This document shows positions 1,530-57,920 of a DNA stretch of 64,000 nt, piece after piece (the stretch's first letter is position 1; the number at the start of each line of letters is the position of its first letter). The translations under genes were made by a program, and so were the position numbers. The notes beneath the pieces are model-generated. The model ran no database searches. It worked only from the letters and a program-made list of their open reading frames with translations, and had not been told where the DNA came from. The stretch is from the IMG/VR virus record IMGVR_UViG_3300031857_000002, positions 1 to 64,000 of that record. The stretch is one strand, 5' to 3'.

Positions 1530-3563
1530 TTAATCCTGATATTTTTTCCATAAAGCACGAGTGCTGGCCAAGATGCCTTCGTCGATGTCTTTTTTCTTGA
1601 TAGCATTGGTTCCAGGAATTTTGTCACCAACTTTAACATTGTCGTCTTCTAGACCTTTGGTAAACAAGTTACCTTCGGCGGTTTTTTCTTCATCAACTTC
1701 TTTTTTCTTAACACCGGCCATTTCCATCATGCGGTGTAGTGCATCTTCTTCTGCTTCGGCATAGCTGTGTTGACGATCATCTTGACTGGCCAACACAGGT
1801 ACTGTGCTTTGACCTGTTGACTTAGGGCCATCTAATCCACCGCTGTACTGCATTGAACTACCTGTTTCTGTGTTGGTAGGATAGTCAGGTTCATTCATTG
1901 ACACTTCGTCAATTTCTTGTTCGCCACATGAGCAGTCAGGAGTACCACATCCGCATGCTGACTTATAGCCTGACCCGCCGTAGCCTTCGCTATCGCCACC
2001 GCCTAGGCCTGCTGACTTCAACAATGTTGCCAACTTCAGTGCATCTTCATCACTGGCAGTAATAGTTAGGCTCTTGCCGCCTTCTGTGGAGTCGCTCATG
2101 TTGATACTCATCGACTCATCAAGTTGACTCATTGATTCTGTAATAGCGTTTTCAAGATCGCGATTCAATGAATCATAAATGCCTTGGCCGTAACTGAATC
2201 CACTTGACGCTGTGGGTGTACCAGAGCCGCCTGCTTCTTCAGTCTTTTCTTTCTTCTTGGACTTTTTCTCGTCGTACTCAATGTCCTTGGCCACTTTCTT
2301 GCCGGCTTTTTCTGCTTTGTCATCTTCAGCACCACGCTTGCTGCCATGAATGCCATCTTTTTTCTTTTCGTCGTACTCAATGTCTTTGGCTACTTTCTTG
2401 CCGGCTTTTTCAGCATGATCGTCACGAGTAGTTGTGCTTTCTTCATCAACAGATTTACTAACTTTGTAGCCGGCTTTCTTCAACAGCGCCATGGCTGCTT
2501 TTAGATCACCAGAGTCATTGTTGGTTGGATCAGTATCGCCTTCTTTCATTTTGTTTCTAACACTTACTTTGCCTGGCTCATTTTTTGGCTTGTTGCCAAT
2601 CATGAATCCTTGCAGTGCTTTGCCTGAGTCAGATACTGAACCAGCAGATCCTTTTTTCTCACGCTCACCTTTGTGCTTGATTGCTTTGCTGGTCACACGT
2701 TCTGTACCCTTGGCAGGCCCCTTTGGACGACCACGGCTGCGTTTCTCTTGTGCGTTGCCTTCGTCATCAGTCTCGGATCCAACTGAAATACCTTGGTCAT
2801 CTGTGCGGCGGGTGACTTTACGACCTGTTGCTGTGTGCTTGATATCATGTTTGGAACCGTGTTCTACATCTCCCACACGTGGTTTGTCAGCACGTGGCTT
2901 CTTGTAGTTTGTGAACGGGTTGTTATCGTCTTCTTCGGCTGTTTTTTGTTTGCCACCTTTGCGTAACATAGCAAAGTCATTGGCATCTAATTTGCCATTG
3001 TCGTTTTTATCCAGTGTCTTTTGGCGGCCACTCAGTGCCGATTTCATGGCTTCGGCAGCAACGTCGCCTAGCATTTCGTCAACTTCTTTTTTAGCGCCAG
3101 CAATCTTGTCAGCAAAAGTAATCTTGTCTTTTGGTGGTGCCAAGGCAGCAAAACTCTTGGCCTTGGCAGGATTCATTTTTTCTTTGATAGGACTTTGTTG
3201 ACCCAAGCGTTGTTGAGCACGTTTCAATCCTTCAGGACTAGTAGGGCTCTGTGTGCGCTCTTTGTCTAGGTCTTGTAAAGTCATTCTGTTGCCAGGACGA
3301 TTCACAGCAGGGATCTGACTCTTGTCTGGACCGCCTTGGTAAGCACCTTCGTCTACTTCATTGTCATACTTGTCGTATTTTTTACGAACAGGATCCAATG
3401 CTTTGCCTTCACGACCGGCCTTGGCCAAGGCTTCCATACCTTGTTTGCCGTATTTCTCGTAACCCTTGGCAGCACGACTCATGTCACGCTCATTGAGTTG
3501 TTTGGATTCTGGTGCGTCGTTGACAGCAGCCAGGCGTTTGTTTAAGTCATAGAAAAATGTCAT
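1530..3563 (-). CDS. highly charged putative internal head (poly)protein
   Basis: 677 aa, K/E/D/G-rich; many (L/I/V/M)xE sites; AT-hook-like RGRP, EF-hand-like DKNDNGKLDANDF, internal repeat AEKAGKKVAKDIEYDEKK. Confidence 0.6.
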   Translation of the reverse strand: MTFFYDLNKRLAAVNDAPESKQLNERDMSRAAKGYEKYGKQGMEALAKAGREGKALDPVRKKYDKYDNEVDEGAYQGGPDKSQIPAVNRPGNRMTLQDLDKERTQSPTSPEGLKRAQQRLGQQSPIKEKMNPAKAKSFAALAPPKDKITFADKIAGAKKEVDEMLGDVAAEAMKSALSGRQKTLDKNDNGKLDANDFAMLRKGGKQKTAEEDDNNPFTNYKKPRADKPRVGDVEHGSKHDIKHTATGRKVTRRTDDQGISVGSETDDEGNAQEKRSRGRPKGPAKGTERVTSKAIKHKGEREKKGSAGSVSDSGKALQGFMIGNKPKNEPGKVSVRNKMKEGDTDPTNNDSGDLKAAMALLKKAGYKVSKSVDEESTTTRDDHAEKAGKKVAKDIEYDEKKKDGIHGSKRGAEDDKAEKAGKKVAKDIEYDEKKSKKKEKTEEAGGSGTPTASSGFSYGQGIYDSLNRDLENAITESMSQLDESMSINMSDSTEGGKSLTITASDEDALKLATLLKSAGLGGGDSEGYGGSGYKSACGCGTPDCSCGEQEIDEVSMNEPDYPTNTETGSSMQYSGGLDGPKSTGQSTVPVLASQDDRQHSYAEAEEDALHRMMEMAGVKKKEVDEEKTAEGNLFTKGLEDDNVKVGDKIPGTNAIKKKDIDEGILASTRALWKKYQD

Positions 3564-6687: not shown

Positions 6688-7323
6688 TTAGCTGGCTGCA
6701 CCAGCACCTGTAACAACGTCACCTAGTGTTCGGCCAATTGCACCACCAACACCAGCACCGTTAGACCCTGATGGGATCTGGTTGGCGTTATCGTACGCAA
6801 TACCCAGACTGATTGTAACTACTGCGCTTTCAGCATAGCTTAATTGCCCGTAGTCTGCTGACTTCAAGTAGCAGCCATACAACTCCCAAGTTTCAAGAAC
6901 TGTGGGTTCAGCAGAGCCGTTGCCACCGTCTAGGATTTCCAACCGTGTTAGGAACTTGTAGTCAATACCAGAACTGGCTGAAGCCATTTCCAAAAAGTCC
7001 ATCTGCTTTTGAAGTTGCGACCCGACTAATTTACTCACTGAGCCTGATGCGTCGTCACGAATTTCGCAAGTGACATCAGCCCATGTAGGTTTGCCGGCCA
7101 ACTTCAGGGTTGAGTTGTAGATTGGTATAGTAATGTCTTCAAAACTCAGATTGGGTCTGTTAAAAGTCATTACCTGTTTTGTTAATTCAGTGGTAGGGCT
7201 TGCGCTTGCGCCAAAGTTCTCAAAAAACACACGGAAGCGATATTTGAGTTTGGGCATCAACAAGCCCTGATCAGCCTGGCCGCCCAGTGGAACTGACATT
7301 CTTGATAGTGATGAACTTGCCAT
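6688..7323 (-). CDS. tail tube protein (gp19-like)
   Basis: LMPKLKYRFRV, RPNLSF, AGKPTW, ETWELYGC, YDNA motifs; follows the sheath gene; AGGAG RBS. Confidence 0.85.
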   Translation of the reverse strand: MASSSLSRMSVPLGGQADQGLLMPKLKYRFRVFFENFGASASPTTELTKQVMTFNRPNLSFEDITIPIYNSTLKLAGKPTWADVTCEIRDDASGSVSKLVGSQLQKQMDFLEMASASSGIDYKFLTRLEILDGGNGSAEPTVLETWELYGCYLKSADYGQLSYAESAVVTISLGIAYDNANQIPSGSNGAGVGGAIGRTLGDVVTGAGAAS

Positions 7324-15876: not shown

Positions 15877-17274
15877 ATGCAACAATTTTTTTACGACGAA
15901 CAAATACGTCGCTTTCTATTACAGTTTACCAGGATATTTTCTGGCTTCCAAGTTGAGTACGGACGTCAAGAAAACTCTGATGCGGCTGCATTGCTGAGAG
16001 TCCCTGTGCGCTATGGTGATGCCAGTCGTAATGCACAAACAATCATACAAGAAAACTCAGCAAACTTTTTGCCTGCTACACCCATGATGACCTTTTATAT
16101 TTCTGGCCTGGATTACGATCGTCCCAGAATGCAAGAGCCGTATCATGTGAGCAAACGCACTATTCGTCAACGCACATACGACCCAGACACAGAAACTTAT
16201 GAAACCACACAGGGCAATGCATTCACTGTTGAACGCTTAATGCCTGTACCTTACAAGTTGACCATTACTCTGGACATTTGGACCTCAAACACCAATCAAA
16301 AGTTTCAGATCCTGGAGCAGATTCTCACACTGTTTAATCCTGCACTAGAAGTACAAAGCACAGACAACTTCTTGGATTGGACATCACTCAGTGTGGTTGA
16401 GCTTGAATCCACGCAATGGACCAGTCGTACTATACCTATCAGCACAGAAAATCCCATTGACATTTGCACGTTGAGATTTAACTTGCCTATCTGGATCAGC
16501 TCACCTGCCAAGGTCAAGAAACTGGGCATTATTGAGCGTGTGATTGCCAGCATGTACGATGCCCAAGGCGACTTTGTGGATGCTATTATCAACAATGACT
16601 TGTTGTTGGGCACAAGACAAAAAATCACACCATACAATTATGCTGTGGTTGTGATTGGCAATCAAATTCAGTGTTTACAACAACAATTGATAGTGCAAGA
16701 GCCCACCAACGACGAACTGGCTGCTACCACTGTTGTGAGCGACAGTACGCTGTTGTGGCCAGCTGTGATTGGCATGTATGGTGTTTTGCGTCCAGGCATT
16801 AGTCAAATTAGGTTGGATCAAGATGATGGTAGCCAGGTGATTGGTACCATTGCGGTAAACCCCAATGATGAAAGATTCTTGATATTCAACATTGACGCCG
16901 ACACTGCACCTCAGAATAGTTTGCCAGCTATCAACGCAGTGATAAATCCATTAGCAAGTGGCCCTGGTCAAGGACTGCCGGCCGCAGCCGCAGGACAACG
17001 ATATTTGTTGACCGAAGCTACTGGCGCTGAAGACAACTCAGCGCCTGCCACAGCCTGGGTTGGTGCCAGTGGAAGACCACTAGTGGCCAGCGCAAACGAC
17101 ATCATTCAATATGATGGTGCAAGATGGGACGTGGCGTTTATTGCTGACACCCAAACTGAAATACAGTTTGTTACAAATTTAACAACTTCAATACAATACA
17201 AATGGACGGGCGCAGAATGGATAAAAAGCTATCAAGGAGTGTACCCCGGAGGGGACTGGAGTCTGGTCCTGTAA
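15877..17274 (+). CDS. tail terminator / sheath stabilizer (gp15-like) with C-terminal extension
   Basis: FFYDEQIRR.L.QF..IFS, VPVRYG, MPVPY.L...L.IW, Q..QILEQIL..FNP. Confidence 0.85.
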   Translation: MQQFFYDEQIRRFLLQFTRIFSGFQVEYGRQENSDAAALLRVPVRYGDASRNAQTIIQENSANFLPATPMMTFYISGLDYDRPRMQEPYHVSKRTIRQRTYDPDTETYETTQGNAFTVERLMPVPYKLTITLDIWTSNTNQKFQILEQILTLFNPALEVQSTDNFLDWTSLSVVELESTQWTSRTIPISTENPIDICTLRFNLPIWISSPAKVKKLGIIERVIASMYDAQGDFVDAIINNDLLLGTRQKITPYNYAVVVIGNQIQCLQQQLIVQEPTNDELAATTVVSDSTLLWPAVIGMYGVLRPGISQIRLDQDDGSQVIGTIAVNPNDERFLIFNIDADTAPQNSLPAINAVINPLASGPGQGLPAAAAGQRYLLTEATGAEDNSAPATAWVGASGRPLVASANDIIQYDGARWDVAFIADTQTEIQFVTNLTTSIQYKWTGAEWIKSYQGVYPGGDWSLVL

Positions 17275-17690
17275 ATGCCGTAGGTGTTTGGTTTCGTAGC
17301 AATCAAACTGCTAGATATTTGTACTTACTACGTAACGATTCCAAACATCCCGGTGCCTGGGGTTTACCAGGCGGCAAAGTAGAATCTGGCGAAACCTTGC
17401 TGGGTGGCATGGAACGAGAATGTATTGAAGAGCTTGGCAGTTTTCCCACATACCAAAAACTAATTCCCATAGAAAAATTCACATCAGCAGATGGCGACTT
17501 TGTGTATCACACGTTTGTTTGTGTTGTGGAGTCAGAGTTTGTGCCTGTGCTAAATGACGAACACCTGGGCTATGCCTGGATAGATTCGGGCACATGGCCA
17601 AGACCCATGCACCCTGGCTTGTGGTCAACTGTGAATATGGAAGCTGTACAAGACAAGATCCTGCGTGTGGAGCAGGACCTTGCTCGTTGA
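17202..17690 (+). CDS. NUDIX hydrolase
   Basis: Nudix box GGKVESGETLLGGMERECIEELG; true start uncertain (overlaps the gp15 3' end). Confidence 0.9.
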   Translation: MDGRRMDKKLSRSVPRRGLESGPVNAVGVWFRSNQTARYLYLLRNDSKHPGAWGLPGGKVESGETLLGGMERECIEELGSFPTYQKLIPIEKFTSADGDFVYHTFVCVVESEFVPVLNDEHLGYAWIDSGTWPRPMHPGLWSTVNMEAVQDKILRVEQDLAR

Positions 17691-17692
17691 TG

Positions 17693-37259: not shown

Positions 37260-38030
37260 TTAGGAAGTGACGTTGTCAACAATAACCACGTCAACCAAGT
37301 TCTGTTGTCCAGACACGTTGGCAGCAGCCGTTGTGCCAGACTTGATAACTGTGCCTTCGTCTGTGAAGAAGTTGGCAGAAAAACGAACATCATTTACAAC
37401 TTGATCAGCGGCGTATGTTGATCCGCCAGCCCAGTCCAACAAGAACTTGTTGGTCAACTTGCTGATTGGAGTAGCTGTAGAATCGTTGTTGGTGTATGTG
37501 ATGGCCATCAAACCGGCTGCAGGAGTCACATCGTTGTCAAGCACACAAACACCCACAGAATTTGCTGTGCCCGATCCTGCTCCGCCAACTGAAGTTGCTG
37601 TGAAAATTGTACCTACACCATAGTTGCTAGGTGCACCATACAAGTTCCAAGTTGTGGTTCCAACTGAAGTGATCTGATATGCTTGGCCAACCAAAAGGCT
37701 GCCATCATTAACAGCAGTAACAGAACCAACTAGATATTTGTGCGATCCTTTTTGGCGGATAATGTATCCTTGAGCAACACCAAGGCCAGCACCAGCAGGA
37801 TTGGCAATGTTAACAATTACATCCACACGAGGATTAGTTGCACTAGGAGTGTCTGTAGCGGCTGCGCCACCTACCACACCCAGATATTGAGCATTAGTCA
37901 TATTACCAACTGAGTTTTTAACTGGGTTAGTTAAACTGCCAAAGTCAGGAAAGCCTAGATCGATGCCTACACTGGCACCACCATTACCGGAACCGGTAGA
38001 TAATTTTTGAATTTTTAGAGGACGACCCAT
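37260..38030 (-). CDS. probable abundant virion structural protein
   Basis: 256 aa, MGRPLK start, YIIRQKG..KYLV motif; own late promoter, strong AAGGAG RBS and terminator. Confidence 0.6.
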   Translation of the reverse strand: MGRPLKIQKLSTGSGNGGASVGIDLGFPDFGSLTNPVKNSVGNMTNAQYLGVVGGAAATDTPSATNPRVDVIVNIANPAGAGLGVAQGYIIRQKGSHKYLVGSVTAVNDGSLLVGQAYQITSVGTTTWNLYGAPSNYGVGTIFTATSVGGAGSGTANSVGVCVLDNDVTPAAGLMAITYTNNDSTATPISKLTNKFLLDWAGGSTYAADQVVNDVRFSANFFTDEGTVIKSGTTAAANVSGQQNLVDVVIVDNVTS

Positions 38031-38170
38031 TTTGATTTCTCCTTATAGAAGCCCAATGCGGGTTCTAGCCGCTACGCTGTGGGTATTAATCTCAGCATAA
38101 AACACCGTATTGTGTTGACAAGTATTTATGGAAAATGTAAAATAGTACCATACTGGAGTGTAAATACCCG

Positions 38171-49738: not shown

Positions 49739-50581
49739 ATGACCCAAACTGCTAACCCGCTGAGACATTTTTTTAGACAACCAGCAATCTATCTTCGCTT
49801 GCCGTCAGATGGCAACTTCTGGCCCGAAGGCGATATTGCAATGACACAAAATCGCGAACTGCCGGTGTTGCCCATGACTGCCATAGACGAAATTACCTAT
49901 CGCACACCTGATGCCCTGTTCAACGGACAAGCTGTGATTTCAGTGATTCAAAGCTGTATTCCCAACATTAAAAATGCATGGTCAGCGCCCGGGCTTGACG
50001 TCAATGCTATTTTGATTGCTATCCGTATTGCCAGTTATGGGCACAACATGGGCATCAGTACTACTTGTCCAAAATGTCAAACCGAAGAACAGTACGAAAT
50101 TGATCTTCGCAACATGTTGGATCAGATTGCGTCACCTGACTACACCCAGACTATCACACACGGTGATTTGGAAATTGCGTTTCAGCCAGTGTCGTACAAG
50201 AATCAAAACGACACCAATCAAATGCAGTTTGAAGAACAGCGCATGATTCGTGCTATTCCTGGATCAGACTTGCCTGACGAAGAAAAGATACAAAAGCTCA
50301 ATGCTGCCTTGAAGCGTATTACTGAGCTCACAGTAGATGCCATGCAGTTCAGCATTGCCAGCATTAGAACTCCACAAGCCCTGGTCACTGAATCTCAGTT
50401 TATTCAAGAGTTTTTAAACAACTGCGATCGTAACTTGTTCAGCAAAATACGTGATCGTGTGATTGAGCTCAGAGTTGCTAGTGACTTGAAACCTATCAAG
50501 ATCACATGTACCAATTGTAGCAATGAATACGAACAATCAATGAATCTGGATCAAGCAAGTTTTTTCGAAACCGCCTCCTGA
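49739..50581 (+). CDS. baseplate hub assembly protein (gp26-like)
   Basis: NPL..FFRQP.IY..LPS, PMTA.DE, D...IL.AIR.AS.G, CPKC and CTNC Zn knuckles, ends ..SFF. Confidence 0.8.
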   Translation: MTQTANPLRHFFRQPAIYLRLPSDGNFWPEGDIAMTQNRELPVLPMTAIDEITYRTPDALFNGQAVISVIQSCIPNIKNAWSAPGLDVNAILIAIRIASYGHNMGISTTCPKCQTEEQYEIDLRNMLDQIASPDYTQTITHGDLEIAFQPVSYKNQNDTNQMQFEEQRMIRAIPGSDLPDEEKIQKLNAALKRITELTVDAMQFSIASIRTPQALVTESQFIQEFLNNCDRNLFSKIRDRVIELRVASDLKPIKITCTNCSNEYEQSMNLDQASFFETAS

Positions 50582-51727: not shown

Positions 51728-52062
51728 TGGACATTTACACAATTTGGGCAGACAAAGAAGGCGACATCTCAGACTTGGACTGGGTCAACGGCATGAAGAG
51801 CTTTTTTGATCATTTGAAATCAGAAGGCCGGATGGAAGACTATCGCATCACTAGATGCAAGATGGGATTCAGAAGTATCGCAGACATGCCCGAATGGATG
51901 ATACTCATGGAGTTCAAGGACATGGCTCAAATGGACTCGGCATTTAAACGTGTTGCTCCTCTTGAAGGAGAACTAGAAGCCAAACACAAGTCGTTCAATC
52001 AGTTTGTATCAGGCACAATACAACATGCATTGTTTCGTGATTGGCCTGACCAAAATCTATGA
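51727..52062 (+). CDS. DUF6614-like dimeric alpha/beta-barrel protein
   Basis: Y..W.D...D.......FF.HL..EG....YR.TR.K.GF......E....EF....Q.D.AF..V....G..E..H. Confidence 0.55.
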   Translation: MDIYTIWADKEGDISDLDWVNGMKSFFDHLKSEGRMEDYRITRCKMGFRSIADMPEWMILMEFKDMAQMDSAFKRVAPLEGELEAKHKSFNQFVSGTIQHALFRDWPDQNL

Positions 52063-53099
52063 ACAACGTATTTTGTGTCACTAGTTATAATTCTGTTGGC
52101 TGTACATTCATTGACTGGAGTGTTTATTTTCTAAGTAATCAATCCCATCACTACAATGTCAAGTCAAACAGATGGTTACCAGTATCACAGAATCCATTGA
52201 CTGAACTTAATGCACACGGTCATGATAAAAATCATCCGCACGGGCATGACACAACCAAAAGTTTTATAGAACATATCGAAACATTAACCTCTGACAGATT
52301 GCATTCGATATATCCGTGGGCATTAATGCTAGGCACCGCAGCTGAATATTTAAATTTACCACCAGAATCTATTACCAATACTGACGCGGTTAATCGTATA
52401 ACTCAATTTAAAAAAGATGATTACAATGAAATTTTGAATCTCTGCAGTGCAAAACAGATTAAAACTGTGTTTGTACAAAGTGATTCAAGATCAATTTTGT
52501 ATTTTCAAAAAAGAAGAGTACTTACACATTTGCTGTTAGACTATAAAACACCAGCCACTTCTGAGCAACAACTCAACGACGAATTTCAAACAGTGTTTTT
52601 TAACAAAAGCCTATTAGACTGGCAGGATAACGGGTTAACAGAAATCTGGGATGTGAGAGAAAGACTAGCATTAGACACTCGTCCATTTGATCAAGACTTG
52701 ATAAATTTTGTTCCAGACTTGCAACATCCTTATCTGTGGATCAACAGCTTCGATCTATGGACACGCACACCCGATGTACTTGAAAAAATAATGAAATTTC
52801 TAGAACTACCAATAGACCATGAAAAATTTATTCAATGGTTACCTATCTGTAGCAAGTGGCAGAAAATACAACTAGACATACTGGAGTTTTGTTTTAACCA
52901 AGAACACATAGTAAAAGCCATCATCAACAACTGGCATTACGAAATAGATCTAACATTTGATCAAGAAGTGATTATACAACACTGTTTGATTTACCAGCAC
53001 GGACTAAATCTCAAAACGTGGCAGTTGGAAAAATTTCCCAAGAATACTAAAGATTTACATAAACTGTTAGAACCCAACATACATCCAATTGTTCTCTAA
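52059..53099 (+). CDS. hypothetical protein (possible degenerate sulfotransferase/P-loop fold)
   Basis: 346 aa, AT-rich; N-terminal S..SVGCTF..WS; late 'DL......L.KI..FL.L' segment. Confidence 0.55.
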   Translation: MNNVFCVTSYNSVGCTFIDWSVYFLSNQSHHYNVKSNRWLPVSQNPLTELNAHGHDKNHPHGHDTTKSFIEHIETLTSDRLHSIYPWALMLGTAAEYLNLPPESITNTDAVNRITQFKKDDYNEILNLCSAKQIKTVFVQSDSRSILYFQKRRVLTHLLLDYKTPATSEQQLNDEFQTVFFNKSLLDWQDNGLTEIWDVRERLALDTRPFDQDLINFVPDLQHPYLWINSFDLWTRTPDVLEKIMKFLELPIDHEKFIQWLPICSKWQKIQLDILEFCFNQEHIVKAIINNWHYEIDLTFDQEVIIQHCLIYQHGLNLKTWQLEKFPKNTKDLHKLLEPNIHPIVL

Positions 53100-53509
53100 C
53101 ACATGCAAGACTTGCCCTGCAAGTCTGTTAATTTCGCTATCGCTCATTAACCAATTATTTTCTTTAAAAGCTATTATCTAGATTACGTGGTCATAGTTCA
53201 CCGTATGCACGGTGAACAAAAAACGCCATTATCTGAGTATAGCAGTCATCTATCATAATGAGATTGTAGTTTCCTACACGGAGGCGGTTGACCGGTACCC
53301 CCTACTCAAGCTTCACGTATCAACGGAACCCTAGTAACCCGATATAGATCCAAGTTCTATAAGCTGGGGTTGTATCTTTTTCACATAGCCCCGACCATTT
53401 GTTGCCTTAAGTTAGCAATTGCCTTTGACGCCCAAGTCCGAATTGGGTATCTCACCAATCCTCAATGGGGTTGAGCCACGTCGCCCAACACAGTGTCTTA
53501 ATCGTTGCC
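53100..53509 (-). ncRNA. candidate ~410-nt structured non-coding element (RNA or origin) downstream of the GIY-YIG gene
   Basis: Largest intergenic gap in the window; at least 8 stem-loops, including a GAAA tetraloop and a UUCG-containing loop on the - strand. Confidence 0.5.
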
Positions 53510-53938
53510 TTACAGTTTGTCTATTATATGAGAGCCATGCACACGCACTTGTATGTGGCCATTGTAATAATCTCGTGATTCCAACACTCTTCTTGAAAAT
53601 TGCTCTCTTGCTTCGATGTAACTACATTCCGATTTGGAGTTGCAATAAAAAAGTATTTCTCTGGTGAAGTTTTCGGTGCCTAGTTTGATTACGTCTGAAG
53701 TTAATTCTGGGCTTGACCCATAGTACTCTCTCCAGTCTGAGTCGACCTTTGATCGTATCTTTTTCTTCTTCTTGATGCCGTTCTTTTGCTTAACTGTCTT
53801 GTATGTTGTCTTGCTAAATTTTGCTAATTTTTTGCCTATGTACTTGCGTCCAGTGAGATTATTTGTGATCAAGTAAACAAATCCAACACATTCTTCGGGC
53901 AACGTCTCAATTGGGGTATCTTGATATAGCCATGTCAT
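53510..53938 (-). CDS. short GIY-YIG family nuclease-like protein
   Basis: GFVYLITN...GRKYIGKK...Y.GSS...F.REIL...E...YYN; Lys-rich insert. Confidence 0.85.
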   Translation of the reverse strand: MTWLYQDTPIETLPEECVGFVYLITNNLTGRKYIGKKLAKFSKTTYKTVKQKNGIKKKKKIRSKVDSDWREYYGSSPELTSDVIKLGTENFTREILFYCNSKSECSYIEAREQFSRRVLESRDYYNGHIQVRVHGSHIIDKL

Positions 53939-53978
53939 GTGTTGTATGCGATTTATCCTTGCTGTATAGTTATCTCCG

Positions 53979-54989
53979 TTACCAAGAAGTTGCGTATTTT
54001 TTGTCTACTACTGAAGTTTTGCATTTGCTTTGACATTCTTGCCACTTGAATGTTTGAAATTCAGTGGACCAGAATGAATCTGCAAGCACAGTTGTTAAAG
54101 TTTTTGTGTGTAAATCAAAGTTGTTTGCTAGTTGTTGCCAGTCTGAATTGTGATTGTATCGGTTGGCTACCCAACAGCAGGGAAATAACCTGCCTTGAGC
54201 ATCAATATACAACCCTTTGTTGCCTATCTCGCACAACGGAGTAATACCGTTGCGACTTTTAGTTTGATTGAATAGTTGTATGTTTGTTTGAGAAACAGTT
54301 TCATCTGCTCCCCTAGTTGTAAATGCTGTGGTGTCTCGTTCAAACCGATGACTACTGCTGATATATTTTACACTGGGTTGCAGTGGATCGTTTACACCAT
54401 AAGAGGGATACACGCTGCCAAATTTTGTACTCTTGGTCAACTGGAATTGGTCTACTCCTAGATCTTTAGCAAACTGCTTCATGCGTTCTATATGACTTTC
54501 ATTGAACTTGAATGCAATTGCAGCCCATACAAGTTGACATTGACTTGCTGATCGCAGTGCTTGAATTCCTGCAACAATGCTAATGTAGTCGCTGTTAACT
54601 CTGTACAAGTTGTTGCTGGTGTTGTCATATCCGTCAATACTGAAATGCACACTGTCAGAAGAGTCTAGTAGTTTGCCTAACTCCAACCACCATGCTGATT
54701 TCTTATGCGATCCATTGGTAACAATCACAATCTCCACAGGCTTGATACTTTTGATATATTCAATTACAGATATTAAGTCATGCGCATAGATAGGGTCTCC
54801 GTCATCACCACAGAACGTGATCTTCTCTACATTAGTCAACACAAACTCGGGTGTAAAATTACGTTTGAAGAACGCTAGATCAAGTTCAGTGTTGATCAAA
54901 CTGTCAGGCACTTCTTGGCGAGCGCAACGAGGACAGCGCAAGGTACACTTACTGGAAATTTCAATGTGAAAGTGCCAAGAGGCTAGCAT
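53979..54989 (-). CDS. radical SAM/SPASM-twitch protein
   Basis: CTLRCPRC, CG..GDP, TNG, FSIDG; C-terminal C...G.L.PCCW...C...C. Confidence 0.9.
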   Translation of the reverse strand: MLASWHFHIEISSKCTLRCPRCARQEVPDSLINTELDLAFFKRNFTPEFVLTNVEKITFCGDDGDPIYAHDLISVIEYIKSIKPVEIVIVTNGSHKKSAWWLELGKLLDSSDSVHFSIDGYDNTSNNLYRVNSDYISIVAGIQALRSASQCQLVWAAIAFKFNESHIERMKQFAKDLGVDQFQLTKSTKFGSVYPSYGVNDPLQPSVKYISSSHRFERDTTAFTTRGADETVSQTNIQLFNQTKSRNGITPLCEIGNKGLYIDAQGRLFPCCWVANRYNHNSDWQQLANNFDLHTKTLTTVLADSFWSTEFQTFKWQECQSKCKTSVVDKKYATSW

Positions 54990-55849
54990 AGTTGTGTTTC
55001 CCTCCGCCATTGATTTGAAAAACTTGTGACAGCATCTTGTGTGCCGCACGTATTCATGCATATTTGATTGGGCTGTGGACTGGTCCACGAAGTTTCAATA
55101 GATTTAAAATCTGTAACAAAGTCTTTTTGTCTAGCACCTAGCCAGCAACAAGGACTTAGGTTGCCACGAGCATCGATGTATGCGCTTTGTTCATTAAGTG
55201 CATGACAGTTGACTCGGGTTCCTTGCACGTTGGTCGAGAGCCAGCCAATTGGCGCTTCGAGTCTATCTGTAAAACCACGTTTGGATACTTTAGCACGGAA
55301 CCATCGGAACCCCATGTCTCGGGCCAGTTGTTCACATTCGTCCACTTGATGTTGGTTGTGTTTGTATACCAGCATGTCCCAGTGTGCAGATCCGCCTGCT
55401 TCTATGAATGAACGTGCGTTGGCCATTAACTTGGACCAATCTACATTCTTACGATACACATGATTAGTGCTTTCTAATCCGTCAATACTAAACACCACAA
55501 AGTCTTGTGGTTGATTTAGAATTTTAGCAAGTCCGTACCACCAGAACGGATTCTGAATAGCACCATTGGTGTTTAATCCTAATACAATACCTGGATTAAC
55601 AGATCTAAAATACTGATATAGGTCAACAGTGTACTTGCCAGCAACTGGATCGCCGTAGTTGCCGCACATGAACATCTTGGTCAAGTTAGCAATAGCTTGA
55701 TCATCAAAATGCTGTTGTACCTGTCTAACTGACAGGTGGTGTTGTTGATGCTTGTGAAATGCTTTGTCAGTTTCGCGAGAACACAACGGACATGCGGCCT
55801 GGCACACATCCGTTGGTTCTAAGTGTAAGACTTTTATATTACGCAACAT
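54983..55849 (-). CDS. radical SAM/SPASM-twitch protein (paralog of neighbour)
   Basis: CQAACPLC, CGNYGDP, NTNG, FSIDGL, PCCW, C..TC. Confidence 0.9.
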   Translation of the reverse strand: MLRNIKVLHLEPTDVCQAACPLCSRETDKAFHKHQQHHLSVRQVQQHFDDQAIANLTKMFMCGNYGDPVAGKYTVDLYQYFRSVNPGIVLGLNTNGAIQNPFWWYGLAKILNQPQDFVVFSIDGLESTNHVYRKNVDWSKLMANARSFIEAGGSAHWDMLVYKHNQHQVDECEQLARDMGFRWFRAKVSKRGFTDRLEAPIGWLSTNVQGTRVNCHALNEQSAYIDARGNLSPCCWLGARQKDFVTDFKSIETSWTSPQPNQICMNTCGTQDAVTSFSNQWRRETQLC

Positions 55850-57920
55850 CTATATCTGTATTATACGACGTAAAGCCGTTTTCTTTTACAACTTTGAGAA
55901 TGTTCTCAACCCGTCCGGCTAGTTCGTCTCTGTGACTAACTAACCAAATACTTTTGTGACGTTCACGACTCATCTTCTTTAACAATGCCAGTGCATTCTC
56001 TACACCTTGTGTGTCTAGCCCGTTGTCTATGAGTTCATCAATAAACAACAAGTTAATTGGGCTGTACAAACTTTCCCAAACATCACGGAATGCCCATGAC
56101 ATAGATAGGATCAATCGATTGCGTTCGCCGCGACTCAAGTTATCAAAGTCTAGCTCACGGCCCAGTTCTTCAATCATCACACTCAAATCGTTTTGGAACT
56201 TCACAGTGTGTGGTAAACCAATACGATCTAGGTAGTGAGTGAGTCGTGCATTCAGATAACTCAGGTTCTGATCAATAATCTTTTTACGCACAAACGAATC
56301 TTTGGATGTTAACAGTTTAAGCAAGAAGTCTTGGTGCTCTTGTAACCTTGTGAGATCGTTAAGTGCATCGTAACTCACAGTCTGTAATGCCTGTTGTTGC
56401 ATTTCTGTAATCTGTTCTGTGTACGGATCCTTCTCTTCGCCTTTGGTGGCAATCTGTGTCAGCAGTGTGTTCATGCGACTGCGATGTTCAACGGCTTGTG
56501 CTTCTGTATCGTAGTGTGTGACAGGTTGTGTTCCAACTTCTACAGGCATGTGCTCTGCCAGTTGTTCAGCATAGGGATCTGTTTCGGCACGTTTTGCATC
56601 AATCTTGTGCTGAATGTTTTCTAGTTCACTTGAATGCCGAATGGCTTCTGTTTCTGTTCGGTAGTGTGTGGTAGGTTTGGTGCCCAACACGCCTAATGCA
56701 GCCAATGCATCTGTATTTTCCATCCACTGACCATTGGTACTCAATGCTTGCAGTGCGGCTTCTTGTAGGGCTTTCTCTTTTGTTGCCAACACCGTTTCGT
56801 GGTTAGTGTCATGAAAGTCTTGACCACATGCATAGCACTTGTGATTTTTTAGTTCTTCAATTTCAGCTCGAAGTTTGTCAATTATCTTTTGTTCTTTAGC
56901 CTCATCAGCGACGCATCTAGCAATCAGTTTTTCAAGGTCAGCAATGTCTTTGGCTCGTTGTGTGTGTGCAGCCAAATCCACATGTGCCTGTAGTTCTGCT
57001 GTGATATCAATATGGCTGAGATTGTTGTAAGTTAGTTCTAACTCGCTGATATCTTTTTGTTGTTTTTGCTTCCAAGCAGTTTGTCGACCAACAAGAGCAG
57101 TATACGCATCTTGTTGTTGTTTCCTTGTGGTCCACACAGCTAGATCTTTGTGAGCCAGTAATTCTACTTCAATGTCAATCTTGGCCAGATCATCATATTG
57201 TGCCACAAGGTACGCTACATCGCTGTCGTACTTCTTTTGCCAAAGTACTTGCCTGCGTTTCAAACTTTCGATCTGTTCTTCAATGCGTTTGTTGGCTTCT
57301 TGCTCGGCACGGATACGAAATTCTTCTTGCGAAATGCTGTCTTTGGTCTGCCGATTGAGTTCTTTGATAGCGTCTGCACGTTCTGAAAGCAAGGTGATGC
57401 CCAACAACTGCTCAATGATGTTGCGTTGGTCATTGGCTTTTAAACTCAAGAACGGTTCGGTGTAGGTGTTTAGTGCCAGCACATGTTTGAACATGTCGTG
57501 ACTCATGTTCATCACATGTTCAATTGCATCTTGTGTTTCGCGACTATCGCCTTGAGCTTCGTCTGTGGACACTTGTGCTTCGTTGTTGACATAAAAACGC
57601 AAAACATTGGGTTTACGTCCACGTTCAATCCGGTACTCTTGCCCATTTACAATAAAGTCCAGACTGACCAACATGTTCTTGCCGTTGGTCTTGTTTACAA
57701 GATTATCCTTGCGAATGTTACTCAGTGCTTGCCCATATAATGCATAGCTGAGAGCGTTAATGATAGTAGTCTTGCCTGTGCCGTTACGGCTGCCGTCGCC
57801 GCCGAGATCTAAATTTTCGCCCAACACCAACGTAAGGTCATTACGGTCAAAGTCGATGCCTTGTGTGGCCGCTCCCACACTCATGAAGTTTTTAACAGTT
57901 AAATTTTTAATTTGTATCAT
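55839..57920 (-). CDS. recombination endonuclease ATPase subunit (gp46/SbcC/Rad50-like)
   Basis: KNFMSVG, Walker A NGTGKTT, zinc hook CYAC, signature LSRGE, Walker B LLFIDE, SH. Confidence 0.95.
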   Translation of the reverse strand: MIQIKNLTVKNFMSVGAATQGIDFDRNDLTLVLGENLDLGGDGSRNGTGKTTIINALSYALYGQALSNIRKDNLVNKTNGKNMLVSLDFIVNGQEYRIERGRKPNVLRFYVNNEAQVSTDEAQGDSRETQDAIEHVMNMSHDMFKHVLALNTYTEPFLSLKANDQRNIIEQLLGITLLSERADAIKELNRQTKDSISQEEFRIRAEQEANKRIEEQIESLKRRQVLWQKKYDSDVAYLVAQYDDLAKIDIEVELLAHKDLAVWTTRKQQQDAYTALVGRQTAWKQKQQKDISELELTYNNLSHIDITAELQAHVDLAAHTQRAKDIADLEKLIARCVADEAKEQKIIDKLRAEIEELKNHKCYACGQDFHDTNHETVLATKEKALQEAALQALSTNGQWMENTDALAALGVLGTKPTTHYRTETEAIRHSSELENIQHKIDAKRAETDPYAEQLAEHMPVEVGTQPVTHYDTEAQAVEHRSRMNTLLTQIATKGEEKDPYTEQITEMQQQALQTVSYDALNDLTRLQEHQDFLLKLLTSKDSFVRKKIIDQNLSYLNARLTHYLDRIGLPHTVKFQNDLSVMIEELGRELDFDNLSRGERNRLILSMSWAFRDVWESLYSPINLLFIDELIDNGLDTQGVENALALLKKMSRERHKSIWLVSHRDELAGRVENILKVVKENGFTSYNTDIDVA

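What the first reader, a model, noticed from the sequence alone, without database searches (positions are those of the whole stretch)
53100..53938. ~410-nt hairpin-dense non-coding element directly behind a GIY-YIG gene: candidate nuclease-associated structured RNA (or origin)
Seen: intergenic gaps in this genome are typically under 150 nt, yet 53100-53509 has no credible ORF and begins exactly at the GIY-YIG stop codon. Stems: AGACTTGC/GCAAGTCT (53108-53126); GTTAAT/ATTAAC (53127-53151); perfect 9-bp GTTCACCGT/ACGGTGAAC (53196-53217); UGUAG-GAAA-CUACA on the - strand (53265-53278, GNRA tetraloop); TATAGA/TCTATA (53343-53361); GGGG/CCCC (53366-53392); TTGC/GCAA (53402-53418); CCCAA-UUCGGAC-UUGGG (53431-53447); CTCAA/TTGAG (53461-53475). 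The loops favour the - strand, which is the GIY-YIG transcript (late-like TAACTA at 53967-53972). The protein is a bare 142-aa catalytic domain with a Lys-rich insert (KQKNGIKKKKKIRSK) and lacks the C-terminal DNA-binding modules of homing GIY-YIG enzymes. Established: compact nucleases can pair with adjacent ncRNAs (IscB/HEARO, TnpB). Inference: this may be an undescribed GIY-YIG ribonucleoprotein in which the RNA supplies specificity or regulation. Alternatively it is a DNA-level replication or packaging origin nicked by the enzyme.
Basis: partly seen in the sequence, partly recalled or inferred. Interest (0 to 1): 0.85.

Follow-up and report, generated by a model that had tools for sequence, protein, structure and literature searches.

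The report
Structured phage RNA behind nuclease gene
The 410 bases behind the small GIY-YIG nuclease gene encode a real, conserved, pseudoknotted RNA of unknown function, an uncatalogued variant of the phage RNA class whose other form carries the known "Polynucleobacter-1" motif; nothing yet shows that it guides the nuclease.

Summary
Window 53100-53509 is the longest ORF-free stretch in the window and encodes a structured RNA read from the minus strand. Across 27 relatives, 74 base pairs are 98.6% canonical and 36 show compensatory double changes (shuffles: at most 6). G-U pairs fit only the minus strand, and there is no codon periodicity. At least 150 copies occur in freshwater T4-like phage contigs.

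It is not wholly new. Its 3' half and tail (53313-53099) match, at E=2e-23, a profile built only from sister RNAs whose 5' half is Rfam RF01718 (Polynucleobacter-1 RNA, 2010). That motif was already reported downstream of this same gene family (PSSM2_218 homologues). The window's 5' domain (53509-53332) matches no Rfam family.

The nuclease link is strong but not obligate:
- A GIY-YIG gene lies upstream in 141/142, 129/144 and 84/106 copies of the three RNA types.
- Other ORFs can sit between them.
- An unrelated PD-(D/E)xK nuclease sometimes replaces the GIY-YIG gene.
- Cultured-phage homologues have no such RNA.

The most likely reading is a co-transcribed, autonomous structured RNA. A nuclease-RNA partnership is unproven. 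A DNA origin, a group I intron and a pseudogene are rejected. Two internal repeats that covary in the same sense remain unexplained.

The parts
53510..53938 (-). 142-aa stand-alone GIY-YIG nuclease gene (SegE-type domain; homologue of cyanophage P-SSM2 PSSM2_218 / 'T4-GC 213')
   Evidence: Pfam PF19835 E=8.8e-33 over residues 3-129; phrog_447 over its whole length. 36% identical to PSSM2_218, E=5e-19. AF2 pLDDT 89; BFVD top matches are SegE-like GIY-YIG proteins.
53332..53509 (-). 5' domain of the RNA, specific to 'type A'. Helices: H1 53489-53483/53476-53470; H2 53469-53466/53434-53431; H3 53461-53455/53446-53440; H5 53392-53384/53372-53366; H6 53359-53350/53342-53332.
   Evidence: Helices with 2-6 covarying pairs each, 97-100% canonical. 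No Rfam match at E<=10. No counterpart in a profile of Polynucleobacter-1-type RNAs.
53254..53331 (-). Conserved pseudoknot core shared by types A and C. PK1 GUUGA 53324-53320 / UCAAC 53291-53287; H7 53308-53305/53262-53259; H8 53302-53298/53284-53280; GNRA hairpin H9 53277-53274/53269-53266.
   Evidence: A 52-nt near-invariant stretch retrieved at least 120 viral contigs. PK1 has 3 compensatory pairs when types A and C are combined. H7 and H9 covary.
53170..53253 (-). Doubled-motif module shared by types A, B and C: repeat X1 53249-53225, hairpin H10 53217-53209/53204-53196, repeat X2 53194-53170.
   Evidence: Type C profile aligns here. The type A profile matches type B loci from X1 through the tail, E=1e-6 to 7e-12; the type C profile matches them only from X2 onward. 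The four variable positions of the two 11-nt cores are identical in 216 of 224 distinct RNAs over at least 12 haplotypes.
53127..53151 (-). Hairpin H11: 6-bp stem, GA/GAA internal loop, GC-GNNA-GC tip. Part of the tail module common to all three types. An A-rich variable linker (53152-53169) precedes it.
   Evidence: All 8 pairs covary. The tail is present in all loci aligned for each of the three RNA types.
53108..53126 (.). Terminator-like hairpin H12 between the two convergent transcription units.
   Evidence: Flagged as terminator-like on the + strand. The stem covaries in relatives. The U-run on the - strand is weak.

Best explanation
Shown:
- 53108-53509 encodes a structured RNA of about 340-400 nt on the - strand.
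- It is one of three forms (A, B, C) of an RNA family abundant in T4-like phage contigs.
- All three forms share a module of two 25-nt direct repeats around a hairpin, then a GA-loop hairpin and a terminator-like hairpin.
- A and C also share a pseudoknotted core.
- The 5' domains differ. Form C's is Rfam's Polynucleobacter-1 motif. The window's (form A) is uncatalogued.

Inferred:
- The conserved RNA starts within about 20 nt of the stop codon of whichever ORF precedes it, and no shared promoter motif is evident there. So it is made as the last part of the nuclease operon transcript and ends at the H12 hairpin.
- It then acts as an autonomous folded RNA. The conserved core and the two identical repeat motifs would serve as recognition surfaces for a partner still to be found.
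- Its tie to the GIY-YIG gene is co-expression and shared position at the end of a variable operon, not RNA-guided cleavage.
For: RNA reality: 92 predicted pairs, 37 compensatory. 74 curated pairs are 98.6% canonical with 36 double changes; the maximum in 500 shuffles is 6, and slid controls give 0-2. G-U pairs are strand-specific. There is no codon periodicity.

Family relation: RF01718 hits of 59-115 bits in form C loci. A form-C-only profile hits window 53313-53099 at E=1.9e-23, using only its 3' half. The form A profile matches form B loci from repeat X1 through the tail; the form C profile matches them only from X2 onward.

Co-transcription: the RNA abuts the stop codon of the GIY-YIG gene or of inserted ORFs.

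Autonomy from the nuclease:
- Homologues in seven cultured phages are followed directly by ORFs.
- ORFs are inserted between gene and RNA.
- Other upstream genes occur.
- RNA type changes at least 44 times on the protein tree, and one identical protein is found with both A and B.
Against: - No transcript data exist.
- The nuclease link is very tight in RNA-first searches: 141/142, 129/144 and 84/106.
- When the GIY-YIG gene is absent, an unrelated PD-(D/E)xK nuclease often takes exactly its place. This hints at a functional nuclease-RNA theme.
- All loci come from one syntenic neighbourhood of related phages, so independence of the observations is limited.
- No partner for the repeat motifs was found in cis.
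Confidence: 0.45

Rival explanations
1. The RNA is a functional partner of the small nuclease encoded just upstream. It could be a scaffold or specificity factor, a regulator, or an inhibitor that keeps the nuclease in check (an antitoxin-like role).
For: A GIY-YIG gene lies on the same strand upstream in 354 of 392 RNA copies found by RNA-first searches. In the exceptions a PD-(D/E)xK nuclease (PF24608, E=1e-24) often sits in the same place, and it never occurs in a locus that also has the GIY-YIG gene. The protein lacks a DNA-binding domain. Precedent from established knowledge: HEARO RNA from the same 2010 survey proved to be the IscB guide RNA.
Against: The protein family is a near-universal single-copy gene of cyanomyoviruses and relatives, with no such RNA downstream. 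Near-identical proteins carry different RNA 5' domains. ORFs can separate gene and RNA. No hypervariable guide-like end is present. No complement of the repeat motifs lies nearby.
Confidence: 0.25
2. The nuclease genes are free-standing homing-type endonuclease genes parked beside a highly conserved RNA gene. They target or co-convert that gene, as T4 segB does inside the tRNA/stable-RNA cluster. The RNA has its own, unrelated function.
For: The GIY-YIG domain is Seg-type. Two unrelated nuclease families alternate at the same spot. Similarity between loci breaks at about the nuclease stop codon, where RNA 5' domains are swapped. The region is a cargo hot spot: a 346/356-aa ORF occurs in either orientation, and radical SAM genes are present or absent. 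The RNA contains a 52-nt near-invariant stretch, suitable as a recognition site.
Against: The nuclease lacks the C-terminal DNA-binding region of known Seg enzymes. It is present in most related genomes rather than sporadically. It appears to be under purifying selection (80% amino-acid against 73% nucleotide identity in L048). No cleavage data exist.
Confidence: 0.2
3. It acts only in cis, as an elaborate 3' end that terminates the convergent transcripts and shields the operon mRNA from 3' exonucleases.
For: It always lies at the end of the transcription unit, facing a convergent gene. It ends in a terminator-like hairpin.
Against: A pseudoknotted core with long invariant single-stranded stretches, three alternative 5' domains and same-sense covarying repeats are far more than a protective hairpin needs.
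Confidence: 0.08
4. It is a DNA-level element (replication or packaging origin nicked by the enzyme), a decayed gene, or a degenerate group I intron.
For: Hairpin density. GIY-YIG enzymes are often intron-associated. The direct repeats could in principle be protein sites on DNA.
Against: 188 G-U pair cells are valid on one strand only. There is no codon periodicity and no reading frame. No Rfam group I intron hit at E<=10 in the window or at E<=5 in five related loci of types B and C. No host gene exons flank it: a terminator and a convergent gene follow.
Confidence: 0.02

Closest known systems
Polynucleobacter-1 RNA motif (Rfam RF01718; Weinberg et al. 2010, PMC2864571)
   Same: Same genomic niche: immediately downstream of PSSM2_218-like (GIY-YIG) genes in related phage contigs. 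RNAs carrying RF01718 continue into a 3' core, doubled-motif module and tail that are homologous to window 53313-53099.
   Different: The window's 5' domain (about 180 nt) does not match the RF01718 model at E<=10 and has different helices. The Rfam model (141 nt) covers only the 5' part of the full RNA. The shared 3' part is not in Rfam.
HEARO / IscB omega-RNA and TnpB reRNA (nuclease-adjacent guide RNAs)
   Same: A large structured RNA directly abutting a compact nuclease ORF, found by comparative genomics.
   Different: The nuclease fold differs (GIY-YIG, not RuvC/HNH). The RNA is not obligatory for the protein family. There is no transposon end and no variable guide segment. RNA types swap freely relative to the protein.
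T4 segB beside the tRNA / stable RNA genes (free-standing GIY-YIG homing endonuclease next to conserved RNA genes; from established knowledge)
   Same: A Seg-type GIY-YIG gene adjacent to a conserved RNA gene in a T4-like phage, in a locus that behaves as a recombination hot spot.
   Different: The protein here lacks a DNA-binding domain and is nearly universal in its lineage. Homing has not been tested.
Large phage-associated RNAs of unknown function (GOLLD, ROOL)
   Same: A large, multi-domain, pseudoknotted RNA encoded by phages, with modular variable 5' parts.
   Different: There is no sequence or model match. It is smaller and sits in a fixed position behind a nuclease gene.

Membership tests
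Rfam RF01718 Polynucleobacter-1 RNA | Match to the covariance model at or above 37 bits | tested here: not met
   No RF01718 hit in the window even at E<=10. Sister loci score 39-115 bits.
Rfam RF01718 Polynucleobacter-1 RNA | Lies downstream of a GOS11034 / PSSM2_218-like gene (as described in the 2010 supplement) | tested here: met
   The window GIY-YIG protein is 36% identical to PSSM2_218, E=5e-19. The RNA starts at its stop codon.
Extended RNA that contains RF01718 (form C) | Homologous 3' core, doubled-motif module and tail | tested here: met
   A profile built from form C only hits window 53313-53099 at E=1.9e-23, model positions 242-457. The pseudoknot PK1 is shared and compensatory.
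Group I intron with homing endonuclease | Match to the group I intron model, and flanking exons of a host gene | tested here: not met
   No Intron_gpI hit at E<=10 in the window or at E<=5 in sister loci. Downstream are a terminator-like hairpin and a convergent gene.
RNA-guided compact nucleases (IscB/HEARO, TnpB) | RNA always accompanies the nuclease family and carries a variable guide end | tested here: not met
   Homologues in seven cultured phages lack the RNA. No guide-like variable terminus appears in the alignments.
RNA-guided compact nucleases (IscB/HEARO, TnpB) | Physical RNA-protein complex and RNA-dependent cleavage | not testable with these tools
   Needs biochemistry.
Seg-like free-standing homing endonuclease | GIY-YIG catalytic domain of SegA-G type | tested here: met
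   PF19835 E=8.8e-33. BFVD structural matches to SegE-like and SegD proteins.
Seg-like free-standing homing endonuclease | C-terminal DNA-binding region | tested here: not met
   142 aa, with the Pfam domain spanning residues 3-129. Seg proteins of 200-350 aa align only over about 120 residues.
Seg-like free-standing homing endonuclease | Cleaves endonuclease-free alleles near its insertion site | not testable with these tools
   Needs cleavage and co-infection assays.
Intrinsic terminator | GC-rich hairpin followed by a U-run on the transcribed strand | tested here: inconclusive
   Hairpin 53108-53126 is flagged for the + strand only. On the - strand the U-run is weak in the window and somewhat better in relatives.

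The most novel reading that the evidence does not exclude
The RNA family (forms A, B and C) is the RNA subunit or regulator of small phage nucleases. It would give a bare GIY-YIG domain, or the PD-(D/E)xK enzyme that replaces it, its specificity or control. The two identical, co-varying 11-nt repeats would act as the sequence-reading element for a trans target.
Probability: 0.15. Interest if true: 0.9.

Novelty: new variant of a known kind. Interest (0 to 1): 0.55.

Why it matters
The Polynucleobacter-1 motif has had no function assigned since 2010 and is catalogued as a 141-nt fragment. This work adds four things:
- It belongs to a much larger modular RNA of about 340-400 nt with a pseudoknotted core.
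- At least three interchangeable 5' domains exist, and the window carries an uncatalogued one.
- The conserved upstream gene is a GIY-YIG nuclease, mis-annotated in GenBank as "NAD synthetase".
- An unrelated nuclease can take that gene's place.

This turns an orphan motif into a testable system: one RNA, one small protein, and abundant natural variants. It also gives Rfam-style curation a basis for new or extended models. If the RNA proves to work with the nuclease, it would be a new kind of RNA-dependent nuclease. If not, it is one more large phage RNA whose role, and whose same-sense covarying repeats, need explaining.

Tried and rejected
- Reading the GIY-YIG ORF through its stop into 53100-53509, all three frames: stops everywhere, no continuation.
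- tRNA/tmRNA scan: none.
- Rfam on the window at E<=10, twice: only chance-level hits.
- DNA search of cultured phages: no match.
- T4 endonuclease II (DenA) as the protein's identity: no sequence hit to solved structures and no Foldseek PDB match. Only Seg-type matches appeared in BFVD, so the idea was dropped.
- Hammerhead reading of UGAUGAGC...GCGAAA in H11: rejected, because the flanking bases pair and covary as a simple stem.
- Box C/D, k-turn, CRISPR mini-array and a small-ORF reading of the repeats: considered by eye and rejected. The motifs do not fit, the "spacer" is a conserved hairpin, and linker lengths differ by non-multiples of three.
- All-against-all covariation scans with lax criteria were too noisy. 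A stricter stack filter was used instead.
- RNAalifold on form C alone missed the pseudoknot.
- Search for a cis partner of the repeats by mutual information and by complement scan within -3 kb to +1.5 kb: none found.
- Genome-collection scan for the protein returned mostly mis-binned phage contigs in MAGs and was not informative.
- A 418-nt "gap" at 17275-17692 turned out to be coding.

Full report
**Setting.** The window comes from a T4-like phage. It carries a baseplate hub gp26-like gene (49739-50581), an SbcC/gp46-like gene (55839-57920) and two radical SAM paralogues (53979-55849). The finding lies between two convergent genes: a + strand 346-aa ORF ending at 53099, and the - strand 142-aa GIY-YIG ORF at 53510-53938.

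**Checking the observation.**
- The 410 nt have no credible ORF, and none of the three - strand frames continues the GIY-YIG protein.
- A crude ORF tiling gives a median intergenic gap of 12 nt. The two apparently larger gaps are artefacts of that tiling. This is therefore the longest ORF-free stretch in the window.
- Single-sequence folding is only mildly better than shuffles on either strand (z = -2.6 and -2.9). The hairpin count alone would therefore not have been convincing.

**Comparative evidence.**
- A protein-based search of viral contigs found at least 595 close relatives of the GIY-YIG gene.
- In about 28 of the 80 loci kept, the 410 nt are conserved at 74-100% identity right behind the stop codon. 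This is sometimes better than the gene itself: in L048 the RNA is 84% identical and the gene 73%.
- The alignment shows textbook compensation. Examples are UUGGGC/GCUCAA against CUGAGU/GCUCAG, AUCCGC/GCGGAU and GCAAGC/GCUUGC. The tetraloop hairpin appears as GUAG-GAAA-CUAC, GUGU-GCAA-ACAC, GUUG-GAAA-CAAC and GUGG-GUAA-CCAC.
- RNAalifold on 27 copies predicts 92 pairs, 37 of them with double changes.
- My curated set of 74 pairs in 12 helices is 98.6% canonical, and 36 pairs show double changes. In 500 column shuffles the maximum was 6. With partners slid by 1-2 columns the counts were 0-2.
- The helices contain 188 G-U cells, which would be C-A mismatches on the + strand.
- Variable columns show no codon periodicity: 48/56/57, against 67/45/124 in the GIY-YIG gene.

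**Anatomy in window coordinates, - strand**.
- 5' domain, 53509-53332: helices H1, H2, H3, H5 and H6.
- Pseudoknotted core, 53331-53254:
  - PK1 is GUUGA 53324-53320 with UCAAC 53291-53287.
  - H7 and H8 are conserved helices of the core.
  - H9 is a GNRA hairpin.
  - PK1 is invariant within the window's type but compensatory across types: GUUGU/ACAAC, GUCGU/ACGAC, GUCAU/AUGAC and GUCAG/CUGAC.
- Doubled-motif module, 53253-53170: repeat X1 (53249-53225), the 9-bp hairpin H10, and repeat X2 (53194-53170).
- A variable A-rich linker follows the doubled-motif module.
- Hairpin H11 (53151-53127) has a GA/GAA internal loop.
- Hairpin H12 (53126-53108) looks like a terminator. It is flagged for the + strand, and its U-run on the - strand is weak.

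**Three forms of one RNA family.** Clustering the sequence downstream of every GIY-YIG copy gave three types.
- Type A is the window's type, with 75 distinct sequences.
- Type C has more than 20 distinct sequences.
- Type B has 10 distinct sequences.
- Remaining loci have extra ORFs inserted.

Rfam scans of type C loci gave strong hits to RF01718, the Polynucleobacter-1 RNA, for their 5' half (59-115 bits). The window and the type B loci gave none.

A profile HMM built from type C only hits the window at 53313-53099 with E=1.9e-23. It uses only model positions 242-457, that is the core, the doubled-motif module and the tail. The type A profile matches type B loci from X1 to the tail, with E from 1e-6 to 7e-12. 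The type C profile matches them only from X2 onward.

The window RNA is therefore a variant of a modular family. The shared 3' parts carry interchangeable 5' domains, one of which is the catalogued Polynucleobacter-1 motif.

**What was already known.** The supplement of Weinberg et al. 2010 (PMC2864571) makes three points about Polynucleobacter-1 RNAs.
- They are mostly downstream of genes of family GOS11034, with possible homology to PSSM2_218 of cyanophage P-SSM2.
- The 3' half is not always detected.
- None was found in purified phages.

I confirmed that PSSM2_218 is a homologue of the window protein (36% identity, E=5e-19). The gene-RNA association is therefore not new for the sister form. 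New here are the nuclease identity of the gene, the full extent of the RNA and the type A and B domains. A full-text search found no later work on the motif.

**The protein.**
- It matches PF19835 (SegE GIY-YIG) over its whole length and phrog_447.
- Tyr, Arg, Glu and Asn positions are invariant, consistent with a conserved GIY-YIG active site.
- The AF2 model is confident (pLDDT 89), and the Lys-rich insert forms a beta-hairpin.
- Structural neighbours in BFVD are SegE-like and Seg homing endonucleases, but only over the catalytic domain.
- There is no PDB match and no sequence link to T4 endonuclease II.
- Homologues (36-48% identity) occur once per genome in 415 cultured phage records: Synechococcus, Prochlorococcus, Sinorhizobium, Stenotrophomonas and Methylophilales phages. 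They are usually mis-annotated as "NAD synthetase".
- In the seven cultured-phage loci I opened, the gene is followed directly by other ORFs, at most 148 nt later. The protein family does not need the RNA.

**How tight is the nuclease-RNA link?** RNA-first pattern searches were independent of the protein. The GIY-YIG gene lies upstream on the same strand in the following proportions.

| RNA type | Copies with upstream GIY-YIG | Notes |
|---|---|---|
| A | 141 of 142 | 113 adjacent; 28 with one or two ORFs in between |
| C | 129 of 144 | some pattern hits may be spurious |
| B | 84 of 106 | |

All copies lie in the same syntenic slot of related phages, so these are not independent events.

Among the exceptions, a PD-(D/E)xK nuclease (PF24608, E=1e-24) sits immediately upstream of the RNA in L133 (type A). 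It does the same in five loci retrieved with the type-C core pattern: L250, L268, L291, L295 and L297. RF01718 is confirmed in L250 and L297, while L268 and L291 gave no RF01718 hit. This nuclease never occurs in a locus that also has the GIY-YIG gene. Other exceptions have an RNase H-like ORF, a 649-aa ORF or 370-aa ORFs upstream.

On a tree of 245 distinct GIY-YIG proteins, the RNA type changes at least 44 times (shuffled labels: 106). One identical protein is found with both A and B. There is linkage, but no co-evolution of protein with the RNA 5' domain. Similarity between loci of different type stops at about the stop codon.

**Interpretation.**
- That this is a functional RNA is, in my view, settled at about 0.95.
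- It abuts the stop codon of whatever ORF precedes it, and no shared promoter motif is evident. It is therefore most simply the terminal part of the operon transcript.
- I commit, at 0.45, to an autonomous structured RNA whose relation to the nuclease is co-expression and position.
- The nuclease-partner reading keeps 0.25. This is mainly because two unrelated nucleases alternate in front of the RNA and because the protein has no DNA-binding domain.
- The homing reading (free-standing endonuclease genes beside a conserved RNA gene, as with T4 segB) keeps 0.2.
- A purely protective 3' end (0.08) is too simple for this architecture.
- A DNA-level origin, a pseudogene or an intron remnant (0.02) conflict with the strand-specific G-U pairs, the lack of periodicity, the lack of exons and the Rfam results.

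**Unexplained.** The two repeats X1 and X2 share the cores CUC-NN-AU-N-A-N and UCU-NN-AU-N-A-N.
- Their four variable positions are identical in 216 of 224 distinct RNAs across all three types, although at least 12 haplotypes exist.
- Mutual information between matching positions is 0.89-0.98 bit, against at most 0.40 for any other column.
- No complementary partner was found in the RNA or within -3 kb to +1.5 kb.
- Same-sense covariation is not what a helix produces. It suggests a common trans partner, a co-varying reader, or gene conversion.

**Verdict.** This is a real and well-supported structured RNA. It is a new variant of a partly known class, and the proposed GIY-YIG ribonucleoprotein is possible but unproven.

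Noticed in passing
window 38028-38117 (- strand): Match to Rfam RF02980 'freshwater-2 RNA' at 65.6 bits (gathering score 49.9). It is the only Rfam family above threshold in the whole window.
   Followed up: no
window 53249-53225 and 53194-53170 (- strand); also types B and C in related loci: Two direct repeats flank hairpin H10. Their variable positions are identical in 216 of 224 distinct RNAs over at least 12 haplotypes (same-sense covariation). No complementary partner was found nearby.
   Followed up: partly
L133:2293-2805 (- strand of locus); L250 3963-4484; also L268, L291, L295, L297: A PD-(D/E)xK nuclease of about 170 aa (Pfam PF24608) occupies the position directly upstream of the RNA in place of the GIY-YIG gene. 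The two were never found in the same locus.
   Followed up: partly
window 52059-53099 (+) versus L048 536-1606: The 346-aa ORF of unknown function has a 29%-identical homologue (E=1e-33). That homologue lies on the RNA strand between the GIY-YIG gene and the RNA, the opposite orientation and side. The ORF has no 60-nt or longer DNA match (window 52066-52835) in any of the 80 related loci compared. It looks like movable cargo.
   Followed up: partly
window 53979-55088 and 54983-55849 (- strand): Two radical SAM/SPASM-like paralogues in tandem overlap by about 106 nt. Both match the C-terminal half of phrog_21308. They are absent from some related loci: in L007 the GIY-YIG gene follows gp46 directly.
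   Followed up: no
GenBank phage records, e.g. NC_006883 176711-177148 (PSSM2_218), NC_015287 SSSM7_239, NC_041997 gp020: The GIY-YIG family ('T4-GC 213') is widely annotated as 'NAD synthetase'. This looks like a propagated mis-annotation, because Pfam places it in SegE_GIY-YIG.
   Followed up: partly
L281 3911-4304 and 5169-5240: A related phage contig carries a permuted tmRNA (RF04321, 92.5 bits) and a tRNA a few kb upstream of its Polynucleobacter-1 RNA.
   Followed up: no
window 17202-17690 (+): A 162-aa ORF with a Nudix-box-like sequence overlaps the preceding 465-aa ORF by 73 nt. It made this stretch look like a 418-nt gap in a crude ORF tiling.
   Followed up: partly
L008 about 6700-6745; L038 about 2985-3005; linker region of L001, L002, L005 and others: The RNA tolerates lineage-specific insertions. 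These are about 45 nt inside the GNRA hairpin (L008), an extra hairpin in the H2 loop (L038), and an optional small CGCUUCGC(G) hairpin in the A-rich linker that the window copy lacks.
   Followed up: no
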